A program made the position numbers and the translations under genes. A DNA stretch of 62,818 bases, filler included, from Octopus bimaculoides (taxonomy: Eukaryota), in assembly GCF_001194135.2 (NCBI RefSeq). It is 6 parts of 6 records of this genome, joined end to end, with 100 filler letters (N's around TTAATTAATTAA, not from the genome) between each part and the next. Parts side by side here need not be neighbours in the genome. Positions count along the whole stretch, not along the records: positions 57,809 to 62,818 come from NW_026385730.1; 5 more parts are not named here. The stretch is one strand, 5' to 3'. How positions within the stretch are numbered: the first letter of the stretch is position 1; each line of letters begins with the position of its first letter. Shown in pieces: positions 9,437 to 62,818 of this stretch. The notes under the pieces were generated by a model. It made no database searches, was not told the DNA's origin, and was given only the letters and a program-made list of their open reading frames with translations.

Positions 9437-12400
9437 ACATATACACACATTCATACATGTGTGTGTGTGTGTGTGTGATCAGGTAGACAGTGTATAGGTA
9501 GTTGTCAGGTTTTTATCAGGTGATTAACTAATAACATTAGGGATCTAATTCTTTAAATAATTCTGAACAGTTATGATTATTCCACTTACCAGGAGAGTAG
9601 TAGAATCAGGTGAGAGAGGTGGAAAAGGATGAAAGAAGAGAGAGAGAGAGACTGGAGAGGATGTGAGATAGAAAGGCAGAAAAAGAGTGAGAGTTCAGAG
9701 GGAGTAAAAGATAGCGAGAGAGAAAATAGAAGGATGTAAGAAAATATGAGAGGGGAGAGGTAGGAGGAAGAGTAGAGGGAGAATGCACAGAGGGGGGGGG
9801 GGAGAATGAAAGAAAGAAGAGAGCTGAGCTGCCAGGAAATTGGTGTTTGGGTTGGCTAAGTTTGGCTTGATAGTATAAAAAGCTGACATCAAATGATTAA
9901 CAAATTGATTGGTTAATCAATTTATTTATTAACATTTATGTAATAATTATCTCATTAATTATTACAGTGAAACAATAATTTATTCAGTCTTTCCCTATCA
10001 ATTCTTTTCACAGTTTTTTTTCTTTTCAACTTGGTAATATTGGTTTCAAATTTTGGCACAAGGCCAGCAATTTCGGGTGGTGGTGGGGATAAGTCAAATC
10101 GACCCCCAGTGCTAAACTGGTACTTATTTTAATGACTCCTCCCCACAAAGGATGAAAGGCAAAGTCAACTACGGCAGCATTTGAACTCAAAATGTAAAGA
10201 NNNNNNNNNNNNNNNNNNNNNNNNNNNNNNNNNNNNNNNNNNNNNNNNNNNNNNNNNNNNNNNNNNNNNNNNNNNNNNNNNNNNNNNNNNNNNNNNNNNN
10301 NNNNNNNNNNNNNNNNNNNNNNNNNNNNNNNNNNNNNNNNNNNNNNNNNNNNNNNNNNNNNNNNNNNNNNNNNNNNNNNNNNNNNNNNNNNNNNNNNNNN
10401 NNNNNNNNNNNNNNNNNNNNNNNNNNNNNNNNNNNNNNNNNNNNNNNNNNNNNNNNNNNNNNNNNNNNNNNNNNNNNNNNNNNNNNNNNNNNNNNNNNNN
10501 NNNNNNNNNNNNNNNNNNNNNNNNNNNNNNNNNNNNNNNNNNNNNNNNNNNNNNNNNNNNNNNNNNNNNNNNNNNNNNNNNNNNNNNNNNNNNNNNNNNN
10601 NNNNNNNNNNNNNNNNNNNNNNNNNNNNNNNNNNNNNNNNNNNNNNNNNNNNNNNNNNNNNNNNNNNNNNNNNNNNNNNNNNNNNNNNNNNNNNNNNNNN
10701 NNNGGTGGTGGTGGTGGTGGTGGTGCTGCTGCTGCTGCTGCTGGCTATGATTGTCAGCTAAGTACCGAACACTTTTCCGGTTCCCAGCTGGGGCTTTAAT
10801 AAAGCTTGAACATCTTGCTTTATGTCTCAAGACAAAAGGACCTTCTATACTGAACAGTTTTATTTTTTTATTTCATTTTATTGTTATTCTTTTTTTATCA
10901 GTTAGTCAGAGAAGGACTGGATATTCTACCTTTGAGAGTTTCCAGGACCTCCAAAATTCCAGATAAGAAAGGGTTGAGGAAGGGATCCTCAAAATCAGAC
11001 AGAAACCTGACCTTGAATGATTGCAACAGAGTGCAATGATGAGTGAAAGGTGGCAAAGATGGCTTTATGGGAAAATTCACCCTACATTTAGTTGACAATT
11101 CATAAGTAGCATGACACAAGAACATAGAATTGAAAATTGTTGTCATCGTTGTCATCTGGCATACATTTTCCATGCTGGCATGGTTTGGATCCAATGAACA
11201 ACAGGACTGCATCAAATTCCAATGTTAGCTTTAGCATAGTTTCTGCAGCTGGATACCCTTCTTAATGCCAACCACTTCACAGTGTGCATTGGGTAATTTT
11301 TTGTGACAATAACACTAATGAGGTTGCCAGGTAACTTACAAGACAAGAAAAGAAAAGGGGAAAATCCCCTTGACTGTGGGGGATGTATTTGCAAGAACAG
11401 GAAGTGGTTTTATGCCAGGTGTCAAGAGACAAAGGGCTATTAGAGGGATAAGCATGGGTCTCTTGCAATAGAGGATATACATGGCTACCCTGCCTTATTT
11501 AGGGGTTGGTGGTGGTAGCTAAAAAGAAGATAGAGATGGTGTAAAGAAGAACCAGAGCGAACTCTCAAGGTAAAAGAAGGTGAATATAAGAGAGAATATG
11601 AGCAGTGGATGAAAGGTGGAGGTTAGGGAAGGAACAATTTTCTGTGCTAGAGGAGAGTAACAGATATTCAGAGATGGGGGTAGATGAGAACATAGTGAGT
11701 TATGAACACAGGTAGAGGTGTGTTGGATGGGAAATATCAGTATGGAGGAGAGATAAGAGGAAATGAGATAAAATAAGAACAAAAGTTTCCAAATAATATC
11801 AACAACGGTAAAGAAATCCTGATAGAAATATCAAAGTTAATATTAGTTAATATTTATAGCACTTCCAAAGAAATCTGGATCCATGGATTATTTATTGTAT
11901 AGAACAATAAATCTTGTTATGTATTGTTCTACTGAAATAAACATGTTGACAGTAAAAAAAAAAAAAAAAAAAATGGAGGTAGAGAGAAAGAAAGAGAGAG
12001 AAGCAGGTTTAAACCAGAAATTTCATAGAGGGTAGGTTGTTGAGAGTCGTTGTACAAGTAGCAACAACCTTTATTCCTTGGAAATATTCCTTTTGTGAGC
12101 TCATAAAGACAAATACTTATGTTTCATAAACATAGTTTTGTTATATTGAGGAAAATATGAAATGGATCAAGATCAAATATTTAAACTCTTAAACTCTTTT
12201 GTTATCATATTCCTTTTGAAATACTCTATCTTTGTTTCAATTAATTTTGAAAATAATAAAGAATTTGGTTAAATAACCATGTCCTTATTAAGATGGAAGG
12301 GAAGGCGTCGAGCTGGCAGAATCGTTGGCACCCCAGGAGAAATGCTTACCAGTGTTTCATCTGCCGCAACATTCTGAGTTCTAATTCTGCCGAGGTCGAC

Positions 12401-57708: not shown

Positions 57709-58342
57709 NNNNNNNNNNNNNNNNNNNNNNNNNNNNNNNNNNNNNNNNNNNNTTAATTAATTAANNNNNNNNNNNNNNNNNNNNNNNNNNNNNNNNNNNN
57801 NNNNNNNNTGTGTGTGTGTGTGTGTGTGTGTGTGTTTTGAGGAATACATATATGTGTATGTATATATCGCTGAATTATGTAAAGGCTTTTAGCGAAACGT
57901 GTTTCGCAATATCTTTTATTGTTGTTGCATAGAAACTGACAATTCGTCTCGCATATAAACGAGTACATAACCAGTGTTAACACATCTAATAATTTGTAAT
58001 AATAAGATGTCTGTAAGAAAGCTATTACACGAAAATAATTGATAAACATTTTGTTTAAAGGTTTTAACGGCTTCACAACTTTATAATATTGCAAATCTCT
58101 GAGAATATTATTGCTGCTTATCCTGTTTTAGTAATACGTTTGTTTCCTGAAATAGCATATTATTTTGATAAAATAATATCTAAAATCATACCAATCGTTC
58201 TCTAATATTGAGTCTCTCTTCTATGTTATGGTCTAGTTTTCCTTCGACATAAGGCAAATAGAACTATAGCTGAAAATCGAATAGTAAATTCATTAAAAAA
58301 AAAAACCTTGACTCTTCCCTGTCGTCGATTTCATTTGCCGAT

Positions 58343-59317
58343 ATGGAAACTCATTCTGAAGATATAGAAAATATGAAACGGAAGCGAACACAGTTCCTCA
58401 AAATTTTGGAATTTCACAGTAAATTTAATACTATTAGGAAATCAGTTATGGATATTTCCTCGCCGCAGTTTGGAAGAATATTTTTCCACGCTTTATATAT
58501 AATGCATTTTCTATGTCTGATTATAAACCCTATTCGTTACATTGTTAATTTTATACTACTGGAAGTTTATGAAACCGATGAAATGTTTGTGTATATTCTC
58601 ATCATATTTTATCGAATTATGCTTGCCTTTTGTTGTCTGATACAATTCTTTTGGCATTCTAAAAACAAACAGCTAATTGAAACATTTGCTCAAATTGAAA
58701 TCGAAGAAGAAGATAGAAAATTTTATAACTGCAATATAAGATTCTCATACATATCTCTCTCTATAGGTATACTGCTACCGGTAGCTCTTTACATATTTTT
58801 GAAGTATGTTGTGCCGCTTTTTAGCCCTGGTATGCTGATTTTCATAACATATCCTGTACCAATCAACAGTACTTTCAACATTCCATTTCTAACAATACAA
58901 GTTGTAATTAATTGCATGTCACTGACGTCTTATTTATTTGATGTACATATAAATGTAATGATTGGATTCATTCTTAAGTATGAATTTGACAAGCTGGCGA
59001 CTCAGGCTCAATGCTGCCTAAAGGAACAGCAGCCACACATTTCAATTTTGGCGAAGAAACCTAGAGAGATTACAGATTTATGTAATGCACACGATAATCT
59101 GAGTACAATACTGGGATTAGTAAATGAATCATTACGGTTTTCTACAGCATTTATCGTTCTTGGTAGCATCATTAATTGCTGTATTGCAACGTACGCAACT
59201 ATAAATGTTCTATATAGAAACAACGTTCCTGTATACGTTTATATAACAATGATTGCATTCGGCAGTCTGATGACTTGGATTTTAACACTTTGGAATGGTG
59301 TTCGTTTACATGCTGCG
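58343..59317 (+). CDS. Gustatory receptor-like (GRL / 7TM chemoreceptor ion-channel family) long first coding exon, TM1-TM6; TM7 exon(s) not seen in window
   Basis: 325 uninterrupted codons with six hydrophobic segments (~aa45-71, 81-104, 134-153, 182-212, 268-290, 296-318). There is a 'ILKYEF' after TM4 and a GR-type loop 'EITDLCNAHDNLSTILGLVNESL' before TM5. It ends '..LWNGVRLHAA' at a phase-0 consensus donor GCG|GTAAGT (GT at 59318). Family assignment is by pattern recognition, not HMM. Confidence 0.8.
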
Positions 59318-60649
59318 GTAAGTTATAAAAAATACTTACATAATACCATGTCAGTGTAATATCCTTATTTTCAACACGAACCAAAAATGCCATTGCATTC
59401 AATTGCAAGTGACTATGAATGGTGGAATACTCTATGCATTCGATTGCTAATCTCGATCTTTAAGTTTTGCAGGCACCAAGAACTATCGTTTCAGTTCTCG
59501 GCTCCATGACCTACTGAAACTCTTGAACGTTTCGCTCGGTGGAATCTAGAGATGCTCGACATATCAAATGCTAGCCACATCTGTCACCCTATCCATAAAT
59601 CGAAACAACGACCTTATGGTCTTGTGCTAAGTATCGTAACCACCAGACCATATATTTCATATATAGTACTTCGACTTTATTATACTAAAATGTATTATAT
59701 AACATGTCGCTTTCTAATACTATAGGCATCATATTCTTGGATGAGAAGTTATATATTTTTTTAAAAGATGGGGAAGACAGACACATCACATTTTTTGGCA
59801 GATTTCAGTACTTAGATATTGCTTTTGATAAGTATCAAATTATGGTGTAGAATCTCCTTTCTTCCTGTTTCCTGAGTAACGCTGCGATGGACTGAAAAGA
59901 ATGGAATAGATTATTGAGTAGACGAGTGGGAATGTTTTTATGCAAGTATAAACATAAATATAAGGCAACACGTATATATACAAAAAAATAAGTAATTAAT
60001 TATAGGCAAAAGAAATGCTAAAAGTTTTGCGAATTTAATAACTAACGTATAAAGTAACCCAAAAGAAATAACAAACTAAGATTATGTAAATTAATGTTAA
60101 AGTTAATTAGCATATTTTATCATATATTATCATATATTATCGCATTGTCACGCTTAGAAGTTCATTAAGTTGAATGATGTTTAATAGAGAGGGAATCAGA
60201 TACTGGACAGTAATGGGTGAGTAAAACCTAAATGAAATTGAAATGTATGAATATACATACATTATTAGTGACAAGCAACCCTAAAATTTATATTGGGTTG
60301 TACAAATAAAGGTAAACAAAAACCTATTGGTCAAAAATTTCAATATTTCAGCGTTCCCGGAGTGAGTTTAGGTAACGGAAATAGAAGAAGGAAATATGGT
60401 GGAAAGCTACAAACACTAGGGAAGAAGCGAATGATTCAGTTTAAAACTATGAAATAGTAGAGTAAGATGGGAGTACATCATAGCTTACAAAAATAAGGGC
60501 ATAAAAAAGGGTTCAAAATATGAGAGTTTACTACAAATTGGTTTTAATTAATTTTAATTAGGTTGGCTTCGATACCGGAAGTAGGAATTTATTTTAGGGA
60601 GGAAAATAACAAGATGGAGGGGGAGAGAATAACAACATAAGAGAAAATT

Positions 60650-60793
<144 letters not shown>

Positions 60794-61061
60794 CACACAT
60801 ATACATGTACATACACACATACATATGTATTAAAGGAAAAAGGACAACAAAATCCAAGGCAGGACGAGCATTTCAAGTCATTTAGAATATTTAATTGGAG
60901 TAAGATGCATTTGATGTAATCAATTAATTAATTAGTTTTTCAGGCCATTTGACTCTGTAAATAATAGTACTCGAATACTAGAGATAGAGTAATATACTTT
61001 ATTAAAAAGCAGCAAAAATATCACAAAAAACCTGTTGTATATATGTATATATATGTATATA

Positions 61062-61094
<33 letters not shown>

Positions 61095-61097
<3 letters not shown>

Positions 61098-61320
61098 TGT
61101 GTCTGTGTTTGTCCCCCCAACATCGCTTGACAACCGATGGTGGTGTGTTTACGTCCGCCTAAATTAGCGGTTCGGCAAAAGAGACCGATAGAATAAATAC
61201 TAGGCATCCAAAGATGGGGTCCTGGGGTCGATTTACTCGACTAAAGGCGGTGCTCCAGCCATGGCCACAGTCAAAATGACTGAAACAAGTAAAGGAGTAA
61301 AAGAGTAAAAGAGTAAAAAA
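61095..61320 (+). mobile_element. SINE family B 3' half, inside the GRL inter-exon interval
   Basis: CAACATCGCTTGACAACCGATG..GGCGGTGCTCCAGCCATGGCCACAGTC..CTGAAACAAGTAAA. Confidence 0.85.
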
Positions 61321-61353
<33 letters not shown>

Positions 61354-61931
61354 NNNNNNNNNNTATATAAACATATAGCTTATATTCATATTTAAGAAGA
61401 AAAGGAAAATGGCGATTGGGTAGTCAATAACTGTTTATTATTAACTGCAAATTAATCCATTATAGATATATATAAACACACGCATACAGAATCACACACA
61501 CACACATATGTACATATACACGATGATATGTACATACACACACATCACATACGTATTCTTTCATCTTCTTTGGCAACTTCAAAAAACGAATGAGTGCATA
61601 TTGATTATTCTTGTAACATCAACATAAACGATTATATTGTTGACAAAGTTAAACAGATGTATGATGCAATGGTAAATATACCCACTTGCTATCACTTAGG
61701 CACTTTTTCATTAAGGTGTTATATAAAAGAAACTAATTGAAGTTTATGCAATAGAGGTGTGTTAATTGTCGTTCAAGAAGATATTATTAAGTGTTGATAG
61801 GAAAACTAAATAGAGAACACTTCCGACCATGTTTATCGAATTATAATAAGGAAGAAAACATTAACTTCTTTTACAAAAAAGTGTCATTCATTTATAGAAA
61901 GTCACGCGTGCACGTGATCGCGCTCGCACGC

Positions 61932-61977
<46 letters not shown>

Positions 61978-62310
61978 AGGCCACTGGAAGCTATATATTT
62001 AGTTATCCATTCTGTTATATCATAATGGAAAGAACGTATATACTAACGCCTTCTAATTTTTATTTCCATTCGTAGAAAGAAGATATTTGATAACAATTAA
62101 GAGCTCAATATTACCTTCATAATCTAACAATTTAACGTCTACTTATAGGAGAAAATAAGTTTCTTATATTTTGAGTCTAAAATTAATATTTGAATTCATT
62201 AAAGGAAGCATATCGGAAGCAAATTTTGCCTCAATACATAGAAACCTCTGATAGTTACATTGTCTCAGTTGGTTTCAGTTTAACGGAAGTCACACACGTA
62301 TACATACATG

Positions 62311-62365
<55 letters not shown>

Positions 62366-62434
62366 GCAGATATCCTATTTCTTTATTGCCCACAAGGGAC
62401 TAAACATAGAGGGGACACACAAGGAGAGACAAAA

Positions 62435-62608
62435 GGATTAAGTCGATTACATCGACCCCAGTGCGTAACTGGTACTTAATTTATCGACCCCGAAAGGATG
62501 AAAGGCAAAATCGACTTCGGCGGAATTTGAACTCAGAACGTAACGGCAGACGAAATACCGCTAAGCATTCCGTCCAGCACGCTAACGTTTCTGCCAGCTC
62601 GCCGCCTT
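62435..62608 (-). mobile_element. SINE family C, ~90 bp upstream of the second GRL exon acceptor
   Basis: Reverse complement of GGCGGCGAGCTGGCAGAAACGTTAGC..GGGGTCGATAAATTAAGTACCAG. Confidence 0.85.
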
Positions 62609-62706
62609 AAATACACACAGATATCCGTTAAGCCATTTAGAAAGACTATTCAAGACATTAAGAAATAAAGCGTGCGTCTTCTTTTCTACCGATTTCAGTT
62701 GCCGAT

Positions 62707-62818
62707 ATGGCATCTCTTTTTGAAGTTGACGGAACTGGAGAAAATATGAAAACAAATGAAACACGGTTCATGAAATTACTGGAATTTCATCGGAAAATTA
62801 ATATTATTACGAAACCAC
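62707..62818 (+). CDS. Second GRL paralogous first exon (5' part, runs off window)
   Basis: MASLFEVDGTGENMKTNETRFMKLLEFHRKINIITKP aligns to the N-terminus of the 58343 exon (ENMKRKRTQFLKILEFHSKFNTIRK). The two share the upstream context GATTTCA(G/T)TTGCCGAT-ATG. A pyrimidine tract plus AG acceptor lies at 62697-62698. Confidence 0.8.
   Translation, partial: MASLFEVDGTGENMKTNETRFMKLLEFHRKINIITKP

What the first reader, a model, noticed from the sequence alone, without database searches (positions are those of the whole stretch)
58343..59317. Gustatory-receptor-like 7TM ion channel in an apparent octopus genome
Seen: six TM segments with GR-type spacing, a post-TM4 'EF', the 'L..AHDNL..IL..VN..L' loop and a 'GVRLHAA|' exon end. 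Established: characterised octopus sucker chemotactile receptors are Cys-loop/nAChR-derived, and GRLs occur in molluscs but are little studied. Inference: this is a separate, probably expanded, chemosensory family.
Basis: partly seen in the sequence, partly recalled or inferred. Interest (0 to 1): 0.75.

Follow-up and report, generated by a model that had tools for sequence, protein, structure and literature searches.

The report
Octopus gustatory-receptor-family variable first exon
This is the long first exon of an octopus relative of the insect taste and smell receptor ion channels; it is one of a row of interchangeable first exons that probably all splice to one shared pore-forming tail, as in insect Gr28b and Gr39a.

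Summary
Window 58343-59317 (+) is an intact 325-codon ORF running from an ATG to a gtaagt donor. Shuffles of this 32%-GC DNA gave ORFs of at most 148 aa.

The exon alone has no Pfam hit. An AlphaFold2 model from an 18-sequence alignment (pLDDT 82.8, pTM 0.78) matches only insect OR/Orco/GR channels in its top 12 PDB hits (probability 0.99-1.0, TM 0.45-0.60). ABC transporters and GPCRs fall below TM 0.3.

Its closest named relatives are Octopus sinensis LOC118764607 isoforms. They pass Pfam 7tm_7's gathering score and add a TM7 with TYILVVIQ.

In O. sinensis, seven such long exons lie in tandem upstream of a single set of 69-bp, 90-bp and short terminal exons, all with phase-0 introns. That is the canonical GR gene structure.

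The window shows the same layout. A second first exon starts at 62709, and no TM7 exon lies between the two.

So this is a variable first exon (helices S0-S6, the ligand side) of an alternatively spliced GR-like locus with a shared pore helix. The family looks cephalopod-restricted at sequence level: 17 hits among 1.84 billion representatives. Chemosensory function is inferred, not shown. It is a new member of a known kind.

The parts
58343..59317 (+). Variable long first exon A. It has its own ATG and encodes 325 aa: the N-terminal helix S0 and transmembrane helices S1-S6 of a GR-family 7TM ion channel subunit.
   Evidence: Intact ORF. 58-72% aa identity to octopus homologues. AF2 model pLDDT 82.8, with top 12 Foldseek PDB hits all insect OR/Orco/GR. 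dN/dS 0.55-0.59 against the closest homologues.
59318..59323 (+). Phase-0 splice donor (gtaagt) directly after codon 325 (..GVRLHAA).
   Evidence: Sequence. The same donor (GTAAGT or GTGAGT) sits at the same codon in all 7 O. sinensis and all 5 full-length O. vulgaris paralogous exons. ORF calls on unrelated contigs all read through it as ..VS...
58469..58651 (+). Helices S1 (residues 43-72) and S2 (78-103), joined by a short acidic outside loop.
   Evidence: Hydropathy, AF2 secondary structure, loop charges.
58748..59023 (+). Helix S3 (136-169), outside loop EL2 with the N175-S-T glycosylation sequon, and the long helix S4 (179-227), which runs on into the cytoplasm and carries the conserved Y-E-F.
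   Evidence: N175, Y213, E214 and F215 are invariant in alignment A1.
59039..59314 (+). Long helix S5 (233-287), whose cytoplasmic half holds CNAHDNLSTILGLVNESL, and helix S6 (295-324). The S4/S5 cytoplasmic halves are the best conserved part, as expected for an anchor domain.
   Evidence: Per-segment conservation over 21 family members: cytoplasmic S4 and S5 have entropy about 1.5, against about 2.0-2.7 for S3, membrane S4, S6 and EL1.
59318..62708 (+). Spacer between first exons A and B. It would be intron sequence for transcripts that start at exon A. It holds repeats and microsatellites but no TM7-encoding exon.
   Evidence: tblastn with the O. sinensis constant exons found nothing better than E 0.7. 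No [TS][YF]h5[QKE] ORF on either strand. Caveat: a 10-N assembly gap at 61355-61364.
62709..62818 (+). Start of the next variable first exon B (MASLFEVDGTGENMKTNETRFMKLLEFHRKINIITKP...), cut off by the end of the piece.
   Evidence: tblastn with P0001 residues 12-36, E 2.5e-4. blastn 75-77% identity to the starts of O. sinensis and O. vulgaris variable exons. Shared upstream string CGATTTCA(T/G)TTGCCGATATGG with exon A.

Best explanation
The ORF is one of several alternative long first exons of an octopus gene of the insect gustatory/odorant receptor superfamily (GR-like 7TM ion channels, Pfam 7tm_7).

Each first exon has its own start codon, and by inference its own promoter. It encodes helices S0-S6, the part that forms the ligand pocket in solved insect receptors. 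It ends in a conserved phase-0 donor.

By inference from the homologous O. sinensis locus, that donor splices to three shared downstream exons of 69 bp, 90 bp and 54 bp plus stop. These lie beyond the end of this piece and encode the S6-S7 linker and the pore-lining helix S7 with its TYxxxxxQ motif.

The locus would therefore make a set of channel subunits with different sensing halves on one common pore and assembly module, in the same way as Drosophila Gr28b and Gr39a or Tribolium Gr214. The products most likely form tetrameric ligand-gated cation channels in sensory cells.

What is shown: the ORF, the donor, the fold, the family relationship, the tandem exon array, and the single constant-exon set in O. 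sinensis. What is inferred: splicing of this particular exon to a shared tail, a promoter for each exon, channel activity, and a chemosensory role.
For: - The ORF is intact far beyond chance.
- The fold model (pLDDT 82.8, pTM 0.78) has 12 top PDB hits that are all insect OR/Orco/GR: AgOR28 8v3c, Gr43a 8x84/8jm9, AaOR10 8v02, Orco 6c70, MhOR5 7lic. Probability is 0.99-1.0 and TM 0.45-0.60. The next hits have TM < 0.3.
- O. sinensis isoforms P0002 and P0003 (72% and 71% identical to the window exon) pass the 7tm_7 gathering score. The window exon plus that tail scores 25.3 bits, E 1.2e-5, with residues 50-394 against profile positions 37-367 of 370.
- O. sinensis locus L001 has 7 full-length first exons in tandem on one strand, each with an ATG and a GTAAGT/GTGAGT donor at the same codon. 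One set of exons follows: 69 bp, 90 bp and 54 bp plus stop, all phase 0. This equals the GR gene structure described in PMC13388675, which also states that GRs often occur as multiple long first exons spliced to conserved C-terminal exons.
- Two annotated products with different gene starts end at the same terminal-exon coordinate.
- The TM7 sequence TYILVVIQT fits 3 of the 4 positions of the GRL motif given in PMC7746228.
- The window shows the same layout: exon B starts 3.4 kb downstream with no TM7 exon between. The O. vulgaris locus L004 has 5 full and 3 partial first exons in 68 kb and no tail exon.
- dN/dS is 0.44-0.70, and charges follow the positive-inside rule, 20 against 1.
Against: - The window exon alone has no Pfam hit. 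Only 2 of 7 conceptual full-length isoforms (the window chimera and one of six O. sinensis exons, each joined to the 69-bp-form tail) gave any 7tm_7 hit, both below the gathering score.
- A family profile found no GR in PDB sequences.
- The constant exons are not in the piece, so splicing of this exon to a shared tail rests on another species' locus and on RefSeq models, not on transcript data.
- The fourth position of the TM7 motif is T rather than F/L/M.
- No conserved promoter motif was found upstream of the first exons.
- A 10-N gap lies in the spacer.
- dN/dS near 0.5-0.7 means constraint is weak, and some exons in relatives are pseudo-exons with stops.
- GR-like proteins outside arthropods are not all chemoreceptors.
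Confidence: 0.8

Rival explanations
1. Each long exon belongs to a separate complete GR-like gene with its own TM7 exons. The apparent sharing would be an annotation or assembly artefact, so the family is expanded by whole-gene duplication and not by alternative first exons.
For: The piece ends before any constant exon could be seen, and there is a 10-N gap at 61355-61364. A neighbouring O. sinensis gene, LOC118764608, has its own slightly different tail (P0016), so tails can be duplicated.
Against: No tail-like exon lies between exons A and B in the window. None lies between any of the 7 O. sinensis first exons over 60 kb, and none in 68 kb of the O. vulgaris array. In L001 the only 69-bp, 90-bp and terminal exon set lies after the last first exon.
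Confidence: 0.08
2. The exon is a decaying or non-functional copy (a pseudo-exon) in a rapidly turning-over array. It is kept open by chance or recent duplication and makes no working receptor.
For: dN/dS is 0.55-0.59 against the closest homologues, and flank identity (about 75%) is similar to exon identity. Pseudo-exons with in-frame stops and inverted fragments exist in the arrays of relatives.
Against: A 325-codon open frame in 32%-GC DNA has probability about 2e-12. The start codon, the donor and all family-wide conserved residues are kept: N261, H250, Y284, E214/F215 and G319. dN is lower than dS in every comparison.
Confidence: 0.07
3. It is a 7TM protein of another class (a GPCR or a transporter) that only looks GR-like in hydropathy.
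For: No Pfam hit for the exon alone. Foldseek E-values for the OR/GR hits are modest (0.016-0.2).
Against: GPCR hits have TM 0.16-0.18 and probability about 0.1. ABC transporter hits have TM < 0.3 and probability <= 0.3, against 0.45-0.60 and 0.99-1.0 for OR/Orco/GR. The only Pfam family that homologues pass is 7tm_7. Gene structure and the TM7 motif are GR-specific (PMC13388675, PMC7746228).
Confidence: 0.02

Closest known systems
[quoted passage not shown]
   Same: Tandem long first exons, each with its own ATG, encode everything up to TM6. All end in a phase-0 donor. [quoted passage not shown]
   Different: This locus is in a cephalopod mollusc, not an arthropod. Sequence similarity to insect GRs is at the limit of detection. 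The last position of the TM7 motif is T. Splicing here is inferred from genome layout and RefSeq models, not from characterised transcripts.
Gustatory receptor-like (GRL) proteins of non-arthropod animals, including other molluscs (Robertson 2015 as cited in PMC7746228)
   Same: [quoted passage not shown]
   Different: HMMER found no relatives outside a small group that, wherever it carries a name, is octopus: 17 hits among 1.84 billion representatives. This therefore looks like a lineage-specific, fast-evolving branch. I found no paper in the searchable library that describes cephalopod members.
Solved insect OR/Orco/GR channels (Orco 6c70, MhOR5 7lic, AgOR28 8v3c, AaOR10 8v02, DmGr43a 8jm9/8x84)
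   Same: The predicted fold of S0-S6 superposes with TM 0.45-0.60, and long S4 and S5 helices extend into the cytoplasm.
   Different: Only 9-14% sequence identity. The query lacks S7. Tetramer formation, the ligand and ion conduction are untested.
Octopus chemotactile receptors (CRs, nAChR-derived Cys-loop channels; PMC11526382)
   Same: Both would be ionotropic receptor families expanded in octopus.
   Different: The fold and family are unrelated. There was no Cys-loop or Neur_chan Pfam hit, and no Cys-loop receptor among the 50 listed structure hits.

Membership tests
GR/GRL superfamily (7TM ion channels; Pfam 7tm_7 PF08395) | Match to the Pfam 7tm_7 profile at or above the gathering score (26.6 bits) | tested here: inconclusive
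   Window exon alone: no hit. O. sinensis homologues P0002 and P0003: 30.3 and 27.4 bits, which pass. Window exon plus O. sinensis tail: 25.3 bits, E 1.2e-5, collinear over profile positions 37-367 of 370, just below the cut-off. Several other conceptual isoforms gave no hit.
GR/GRL superfamily (7TM ion channels; Pfam 7tm_7 PF08395) | OR/GR/Orco three-dimensional fold | tested here: met
   AF2 model pLDDT 82.8, pTM 0.78. Top 12 Foldseek PDB hits are all insect OR/Orco/GR, with probability 0.99-1.0 and TM 0.45-0.60. All other folds have TM < 0.3.
GR/GRL superfamily (7TM ion channels; Pfam 7tm_7 PF08395) | Seven TM helices with an intracellular N-terminus | tested here: met
   Six helices in the window exon. 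The seventh is in the shared exons of the O. sinensis homologue. K+R count is 20 in predicted inside segments against 1 outside, and an NST sequon sits in predicted outside loop EL2. This is a prediction only; the TM7 exon is outside the piece.
GR/GRL superfamily (7TM ion channels; Pfam 7tm_7 PF08395) | TM7 motif (T/S)Yhhhhh(Q/K/E)(F/L/M) (PMC7746228) | tested here: met
   The O. sinensis terminal exon encodes MIGSFITYILVVIQTKSL, so T, Y and Q are conserved and the last position is T. This cannot be tested in the window itself because the exon lies beyond the piece.
GR/GRL superfamily (7TM ion channels; Pfam 7tm_7 PF08395) | [quoted passage not shown] | tested here: met
   Window: a 975-bp first exon ending in a phase-0 gtaagt donor. 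O. sinensis L001: exons of 69 bp (75234-75302), 90 bp (79184-79273) and 54 bp plus stop (81267-81323), all with ag/gt borders and phase 0.
GR/GRL superfamily (7TM ion channels; Pfam 7tm_7 PF08395) | Forms a tetrameric ligand-gated cation channel | not testable with these tools
   Needs expression, electrophysiology or cryo-EM.
Alternatively spliced GR locus (Gr28b/Gr39a/TcGr214 type) | Several long first exons in tandem on one strand, each with its own start codon and a donor at the same codon | tested here: met
   Window: exon A at 58343 and exon B at 62709. O. sinensis: 7 exons. O. vulgaris: 5 full and 3 partial exons.
Alternatively spliced GR locus (Gr28b/Gr39a/TcGr214 type) | One shared set of 3' exons downstream of the array and none between the first exons | tested here: met
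   Met in O. sinensis L001. In the window, no tail exon lies between A and B, but the shared exons themselves lie outside the piece.
Alternatively spliced GR locus (Gr28b/Gr39a/TcGr214 type) | Transcripts that join different first exons to the same 3' exons | not testable with these tools
   There is only indirect support. Two RefSeq products with different gene starts end at the same terminal-exon coordinate. No RNA reads were available.
G protein-coupled receptors | GPCR 7TM bundle fold or family profile match | tested here: not met
   No GPCR Pfam hit. GPCR structures score TM 0.16-0.18 and probability about 0.1.
Octopus chemotactile receptors (Cys-loop) | Cys-loop ligand-binding and channel domains | tested here: not met
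   No Neur_chan Pfam hit, and no Cys-loop structure among the 50 listed fold hits.

The most novel reading that the evidence does not exclude
Octopods carry one or more large arrays of alternative first exons (tens of sensing modules) on a common GR-type pore module, laid out like Gr28b or a protocadherin cluster. These arrays would give a second ionotropic chemoreceptor repertoire beside the nAChR-derived chemotactile receptors. The exon layout (long exon, 69 bp, 90 bp, short exon, all phase 0), and perhaps the alternative-first-exon mechanism itself, would go back to the protostome ancestor.
Probability: 0.35. Interest if true: 0.7.

Novelty: new member of a known kind. Interest (0 to 1): 0.45.

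Why it matters
Octopus chemosensation is currently explained mainly by the nAChR-derived chemotactile receptors and by GPCRs. A GR-family channel locus with many alternative sensing exons on a shared pore would add a further candidate receptor system. It is still labelled 'uncharacterized protein' in RefSeq.

It also shows that the canonical GR exon structure is conserved between insects and a cephalopod. The alternative-first-exon arrangement appears in both, whether inherited or convergent. This bears on how old that way of diversifying receptors is.

The claim is directly testable with existing octopus RNA-seq and with heterologous expression.

Tried and rejected
- Pfam, NCBIfam and PDB sequence searches with the exon alone gave nothing meaningful.
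- A family profile that included the tail found no GR among PDB sequences.
- The three word-indexed protein searches returned only 3-4 proteins each, even with a 22-sequence alignment. They could not size the family or show its taxonomic spread. The exhaustive HMMER search gave 17 hits, but its profile lost the tail columns.
- The first structure prediction, with 4 sequences, was useless (pLDDT 39.8). Only the 18-sequence alignment worked.
- A search for the constant exons in the window found nothing (tblastn with word size 2, and a motif regex).
- Exact-sequence look-ups of the window ORF and of P0016 found no contig, so the source species and the rest of the cluster could not be recovered.
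- Locus L003, which holds the most distant member P0017, showed one copy and no tail within 10 kb. Its organism is unknown.
- A search for a shared promoter motif upstream of 15 first exons found nothing: the best shared 8-mer occurred in 7 of 15, equal to the shuffle maximum.
- Rfam hits (mir-297, mir-466 and similar) are below their gathering scores and sit on TA/CA microsatellites. No tRNA was found.
- GPCR, transporter and Cys-loop readings were rejected on fold.
- Literature searches found no description of cephalopod GR-like genes. Absence from this library does not prove absence from the literature.

Full report
**1. What is in the sequence**

The piece (57809-62818) is AT-rich eukaryotic DNA, 31.8% GC, with many microsatellites.

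On the + strand, 58343-59317 is an open frame of 325 codons. It starts at an ATG and ends ...LWNGVRLHAA, directly followed by gtaagt.

The frame stays open 13 codons into the intron, so the ORF as listed is 338 aa. In 500 shuffles of the piece the longest ATG-ORF averaged 71 aa and never exceeded 148. The chance of 325 stop-free codons at this composition is about 2e-12.

Hydropathy and the later structure model give an N-terminal helix (17-34) and six long helices: 43-72, 78-103, 136-169, 179-227, 233-287 and 295-324.

**2. Relatives**

The exon alone matches no Pfam, NCBIfam or PDB sequence.

The protein database search found three relatives.
- P0001 is an ORF call on a 1.5-kb Logan contig. 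It is 58% identical and reads through the same donor.
- P0002 and P0003 are isoforms X4 and X3 of Octopus sinensis LOC118764607, 72% and 71% identical. RefSeq calls them 'uncharacterized protein'.

After ...GVRLHAA these isoforms continue with (VHSITRSIHYMQFQ)DIKPEVVAKILVFLNRLTTESHGIDVGGCFVITPSSTLTMIGSFITYILVVIQTKSL. This stretch contains a seventh hydrophobic helix with TYILVVIQ.

An exhaustive HMMER search of 1.84 billion representative proteins found only 17 hits at E <= 1e-3.
- Those with names are from O. sinensis (LOC118764607 and LOC118764608) and O. vulgaris.
- Most of the rest are ORF calls that read through the same donor as '..VS..'.
- At sequence level this is a small, fast-evolving group that looks cephalopod-restricted.

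**3. Family assignment**

- *Pfam.* P0002 and P0003 pass the 7tm_7 (PF08395, '7tm chemosensory receptor') gathering score: 30.3 and 27.4 bits against 26.6. P0003 aligns in one stretch to profile positions 165-367 of 370. The window exon conceptually joined to the O. sinensis tail gives one collinear match, residues 50-394 to profile 37-367. It scores 25.3 bits, E 1.2e-5, just under the cut-off. With the shorter tail form it scores 21.5 bits. Other conceptual isoforms give weaker or no hits, so the sequence signal is real but marginal.
- *Fold.* AlphaFold2 with four sequences failed (pLDDT 39.8). With 18 family sequences it gave pLDDT 82.8 and pTM 0.78. Foldseek against the PDB returned as its top 12 hits only insect odorant receptors, Orco and gustatory receptors: AgOR28 8v3c/8v3d, DmGr43a 8x84/8jm9/8x82, D. 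mojavensis Gr43a 8zdz, AaOR10 8v02, ApOR5-Orco 8z9a, Orco 6c70 and MhOR5 7lic/7lid. Probability was 0.99-1.00 and query-normalised TM 0.45-0.60, for a query that lacks S7. The next hits, ABC transporters, have probability <= 0.3 and TM < 0.3, and GPCRs have TM 0.16-0.18.
- *Topology.* Predicted inside segments carry 20 K/R and predicted outside loops carry 1. The family-invariant N175 lies in an NST sequon in the predicted outside loop EL2. This fits an N-terminus inside the cell.
- *TM7 motif.* TYILVVIQT matches three of the four positions of (T/S)Yhhhhh(Q/K/E)(F/L/M), the only known primary-sequence signature of animal GRLs (PMC7746228).
- *Gene structure.* See section 4.

**4. Locus anatomy**

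I fetched 91 kb around LOC118764607 (L001, O. sinensis CM016866.1).

tblastn with the window exon found seven full-length homologous exons in tandem on the same strand, starting at 9527, 12449, 31361, 39876, 51136, 56579 and 69989. It also found two inverted fragments.
- Each full-length exon has its own ATG and ends in GTAAGT or GTGAGT at the same codon.
- One of them carries an in-frame stop.

Only after the last of these exons come the tail exons.
- 69 bp at 75234-75302, with an internal alternative acceptor that gives a 27-bp form.
- 90 bp at 79184-79273.
- 54 bp plus stop at 81267-81323.
- All have ag/gt borders and phase-0 introns.

[quoted passage not shown] Two annotated O. sinensis products with different gene starts end at the same coordinate, 81323.

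A 68-kb stretch of O. vulgaris (L004) holds five full and three partial first exons. All full ones have GTAAGT at the same codon, and there is no tail exon.

The window shows the same layout.
- A second first exon begins at 62709 (MASLFEVDGTGENMKTNETRFMKLLEFHRKINIITKP...) and is cut by the end of the piece.
- It shares the upstream string CGATTTCA(T/G)TTGCCGATATGG with exon A.
- The 3.4 kb between the two exons contains no tail-like exon by tblastn or by a motif scan on either strand.
- One caveat is a 10-N gap at 61355-61364.

**5. How it most likely works**

In solved insect receptors the pocket is built from the outer halves of S2-S6. S7b lines the pore, and the cytoplasmic parts of S4-S7 form the anchor domain that holds the tetramer together. 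This is established knowledge of Orco, OR5 and Gr43a structures; PMC7746228 summarises the roles of the TM7 motif residues.

Here the variable exon encodes S0-S6 and the shared exons encode the S6-S7 linker and S7. The locus should therefore produce subunits with different sensing halves on one common pore and assembly helix.

Across 21 family members, the cytoplasmic halves of S4 and S5 and membrane S5 are the most conserved (entropy about 1.5). EL1, S3, membrane S4, EL3 and S6 are the most variable (2.0-2.7). This trend is modest but in the expected direction.

dN/dS is 0.44-0.70 in all comparisons. That means weak purifying selection, as is common in young chemoreceptor expansions.

Promoter choice per exon, channel activity and a chemosensory role are inferences. 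Some GR-family members have other roles, for example the warmth sensor Gr28b(D) noted in PMC6307266.

**6. Rivals**

- Separate complete genes with private tails: unlikely, because no tail exon lies between any first exons in three species.
- Pseudo-exon: possible for some array members. For this one the intact frame, start, donor and conserved residues argue against it.
- GPCR or transporter: rejected on fold.
- Cys-loop chemotactile receptor: an unrelated fold and family.

**7. Novelty**

The kind is well known: the GR/GRL superfamily and alternatively spliced multi-first-exon GR loci. GRLs in molluscs have been reported (Robertson 2015, as cited in PMC7746228).

I found no paper in the searchable library that describes cephalopod members or their clustered first exons, and RefSeq leaves them unnamed.

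I therefore rate this a new member of a known kind, of moderate interest. It offers a candidate receptor system additional to the nAChR-derived chemotactile receptors. It also shows that the GR exon layout is conserved between insects and cephalopods.

**8. Limits**

- The source species is unknown. Nucleotide identity is 75-77% to both O. sinensis and O. vulgaris, so the window is probably from another octopod.
- The shared exons for this exon were not seen.
- There are no transcript or expression data.
- The family size per genome is not determined.

Noticed in passing
window 61036-61353 and 62299-62609: Two interspersed repeats. They have several copies in both orientations in the O. sinensis (L001) and O. 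vulgaris (L004) loci, at 70-90% identity. They are probably SINE-like elements; no tRNA-like part was detected by ARAGORN.
   Followed up: partly
window 57809-57835, 60650-60787, 61062-61112, 61927-61978, 62300-62364: Microsatellites: (TG)n, (TA)69, (TG)n, (CA)n and (AT)n. Sub-threshold Rfam hits to mir-297, mir-466 and mir-1277 sit on or beside these and similar CA/TA-rich tracts (one at 61491-61558), and are artefacts.
   Followed up: yes
window 61355-61364: An assembly gap of 10 N inside the spacer between the two first exons. Some sequence may be missing here.
   Followed up: no
L001 56564-57532; L004 19972-20931; L001 37999-37784 and 49665-49186: The arrays in relatives contain pseudo-exons with an in-frame stop and inverted partial exon copies. 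This points to ongoing birth and death of first exons.
   Followed up: partly
P0016 (O. sinensis LOC118764608 isoform X3): A neighbouring gene has its own, slightly different shared tail (GVDQEVVAK...TKPL). At least two such clusters therefore exist in O. sinensis.
   Followed up: no
L001 75234-75302: The 69-bp shared exon has an internal alternative acceptor that yields a 27-bp form (isoform X4 against X3). The 69-bp form is the canonical GR size and aligns to 7tm_7 in one stretch.
   Followed up: partly
P0014 (O. vulgaris CAI9727304.1), locus L004 10001-58380: This annotated 'hypothetical protein' joins an unrelated N-terminal part to pieces of two different first exons over 48 kb. It is probably a mis-merged gene model.
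   Followed up: no
L003 (ENA ERZ21867824 contig ctg123125l) 10001-11068: The most distant family member, P0017 (about 20% identity), lies as a single copy on a 543-kb contig of unknown organism, next to a retrotransposon fragment (RVT_1, Pao). No tail exon lies within 10 kb.
   Followed up: partly
tool behaviour (against 30): The word-indexed protein search returned only 3-4 family members in three tries. The exhaustive search showed 17 representatives in the same collection, so counts from the indexed search understate this family.
   Followed up: yes
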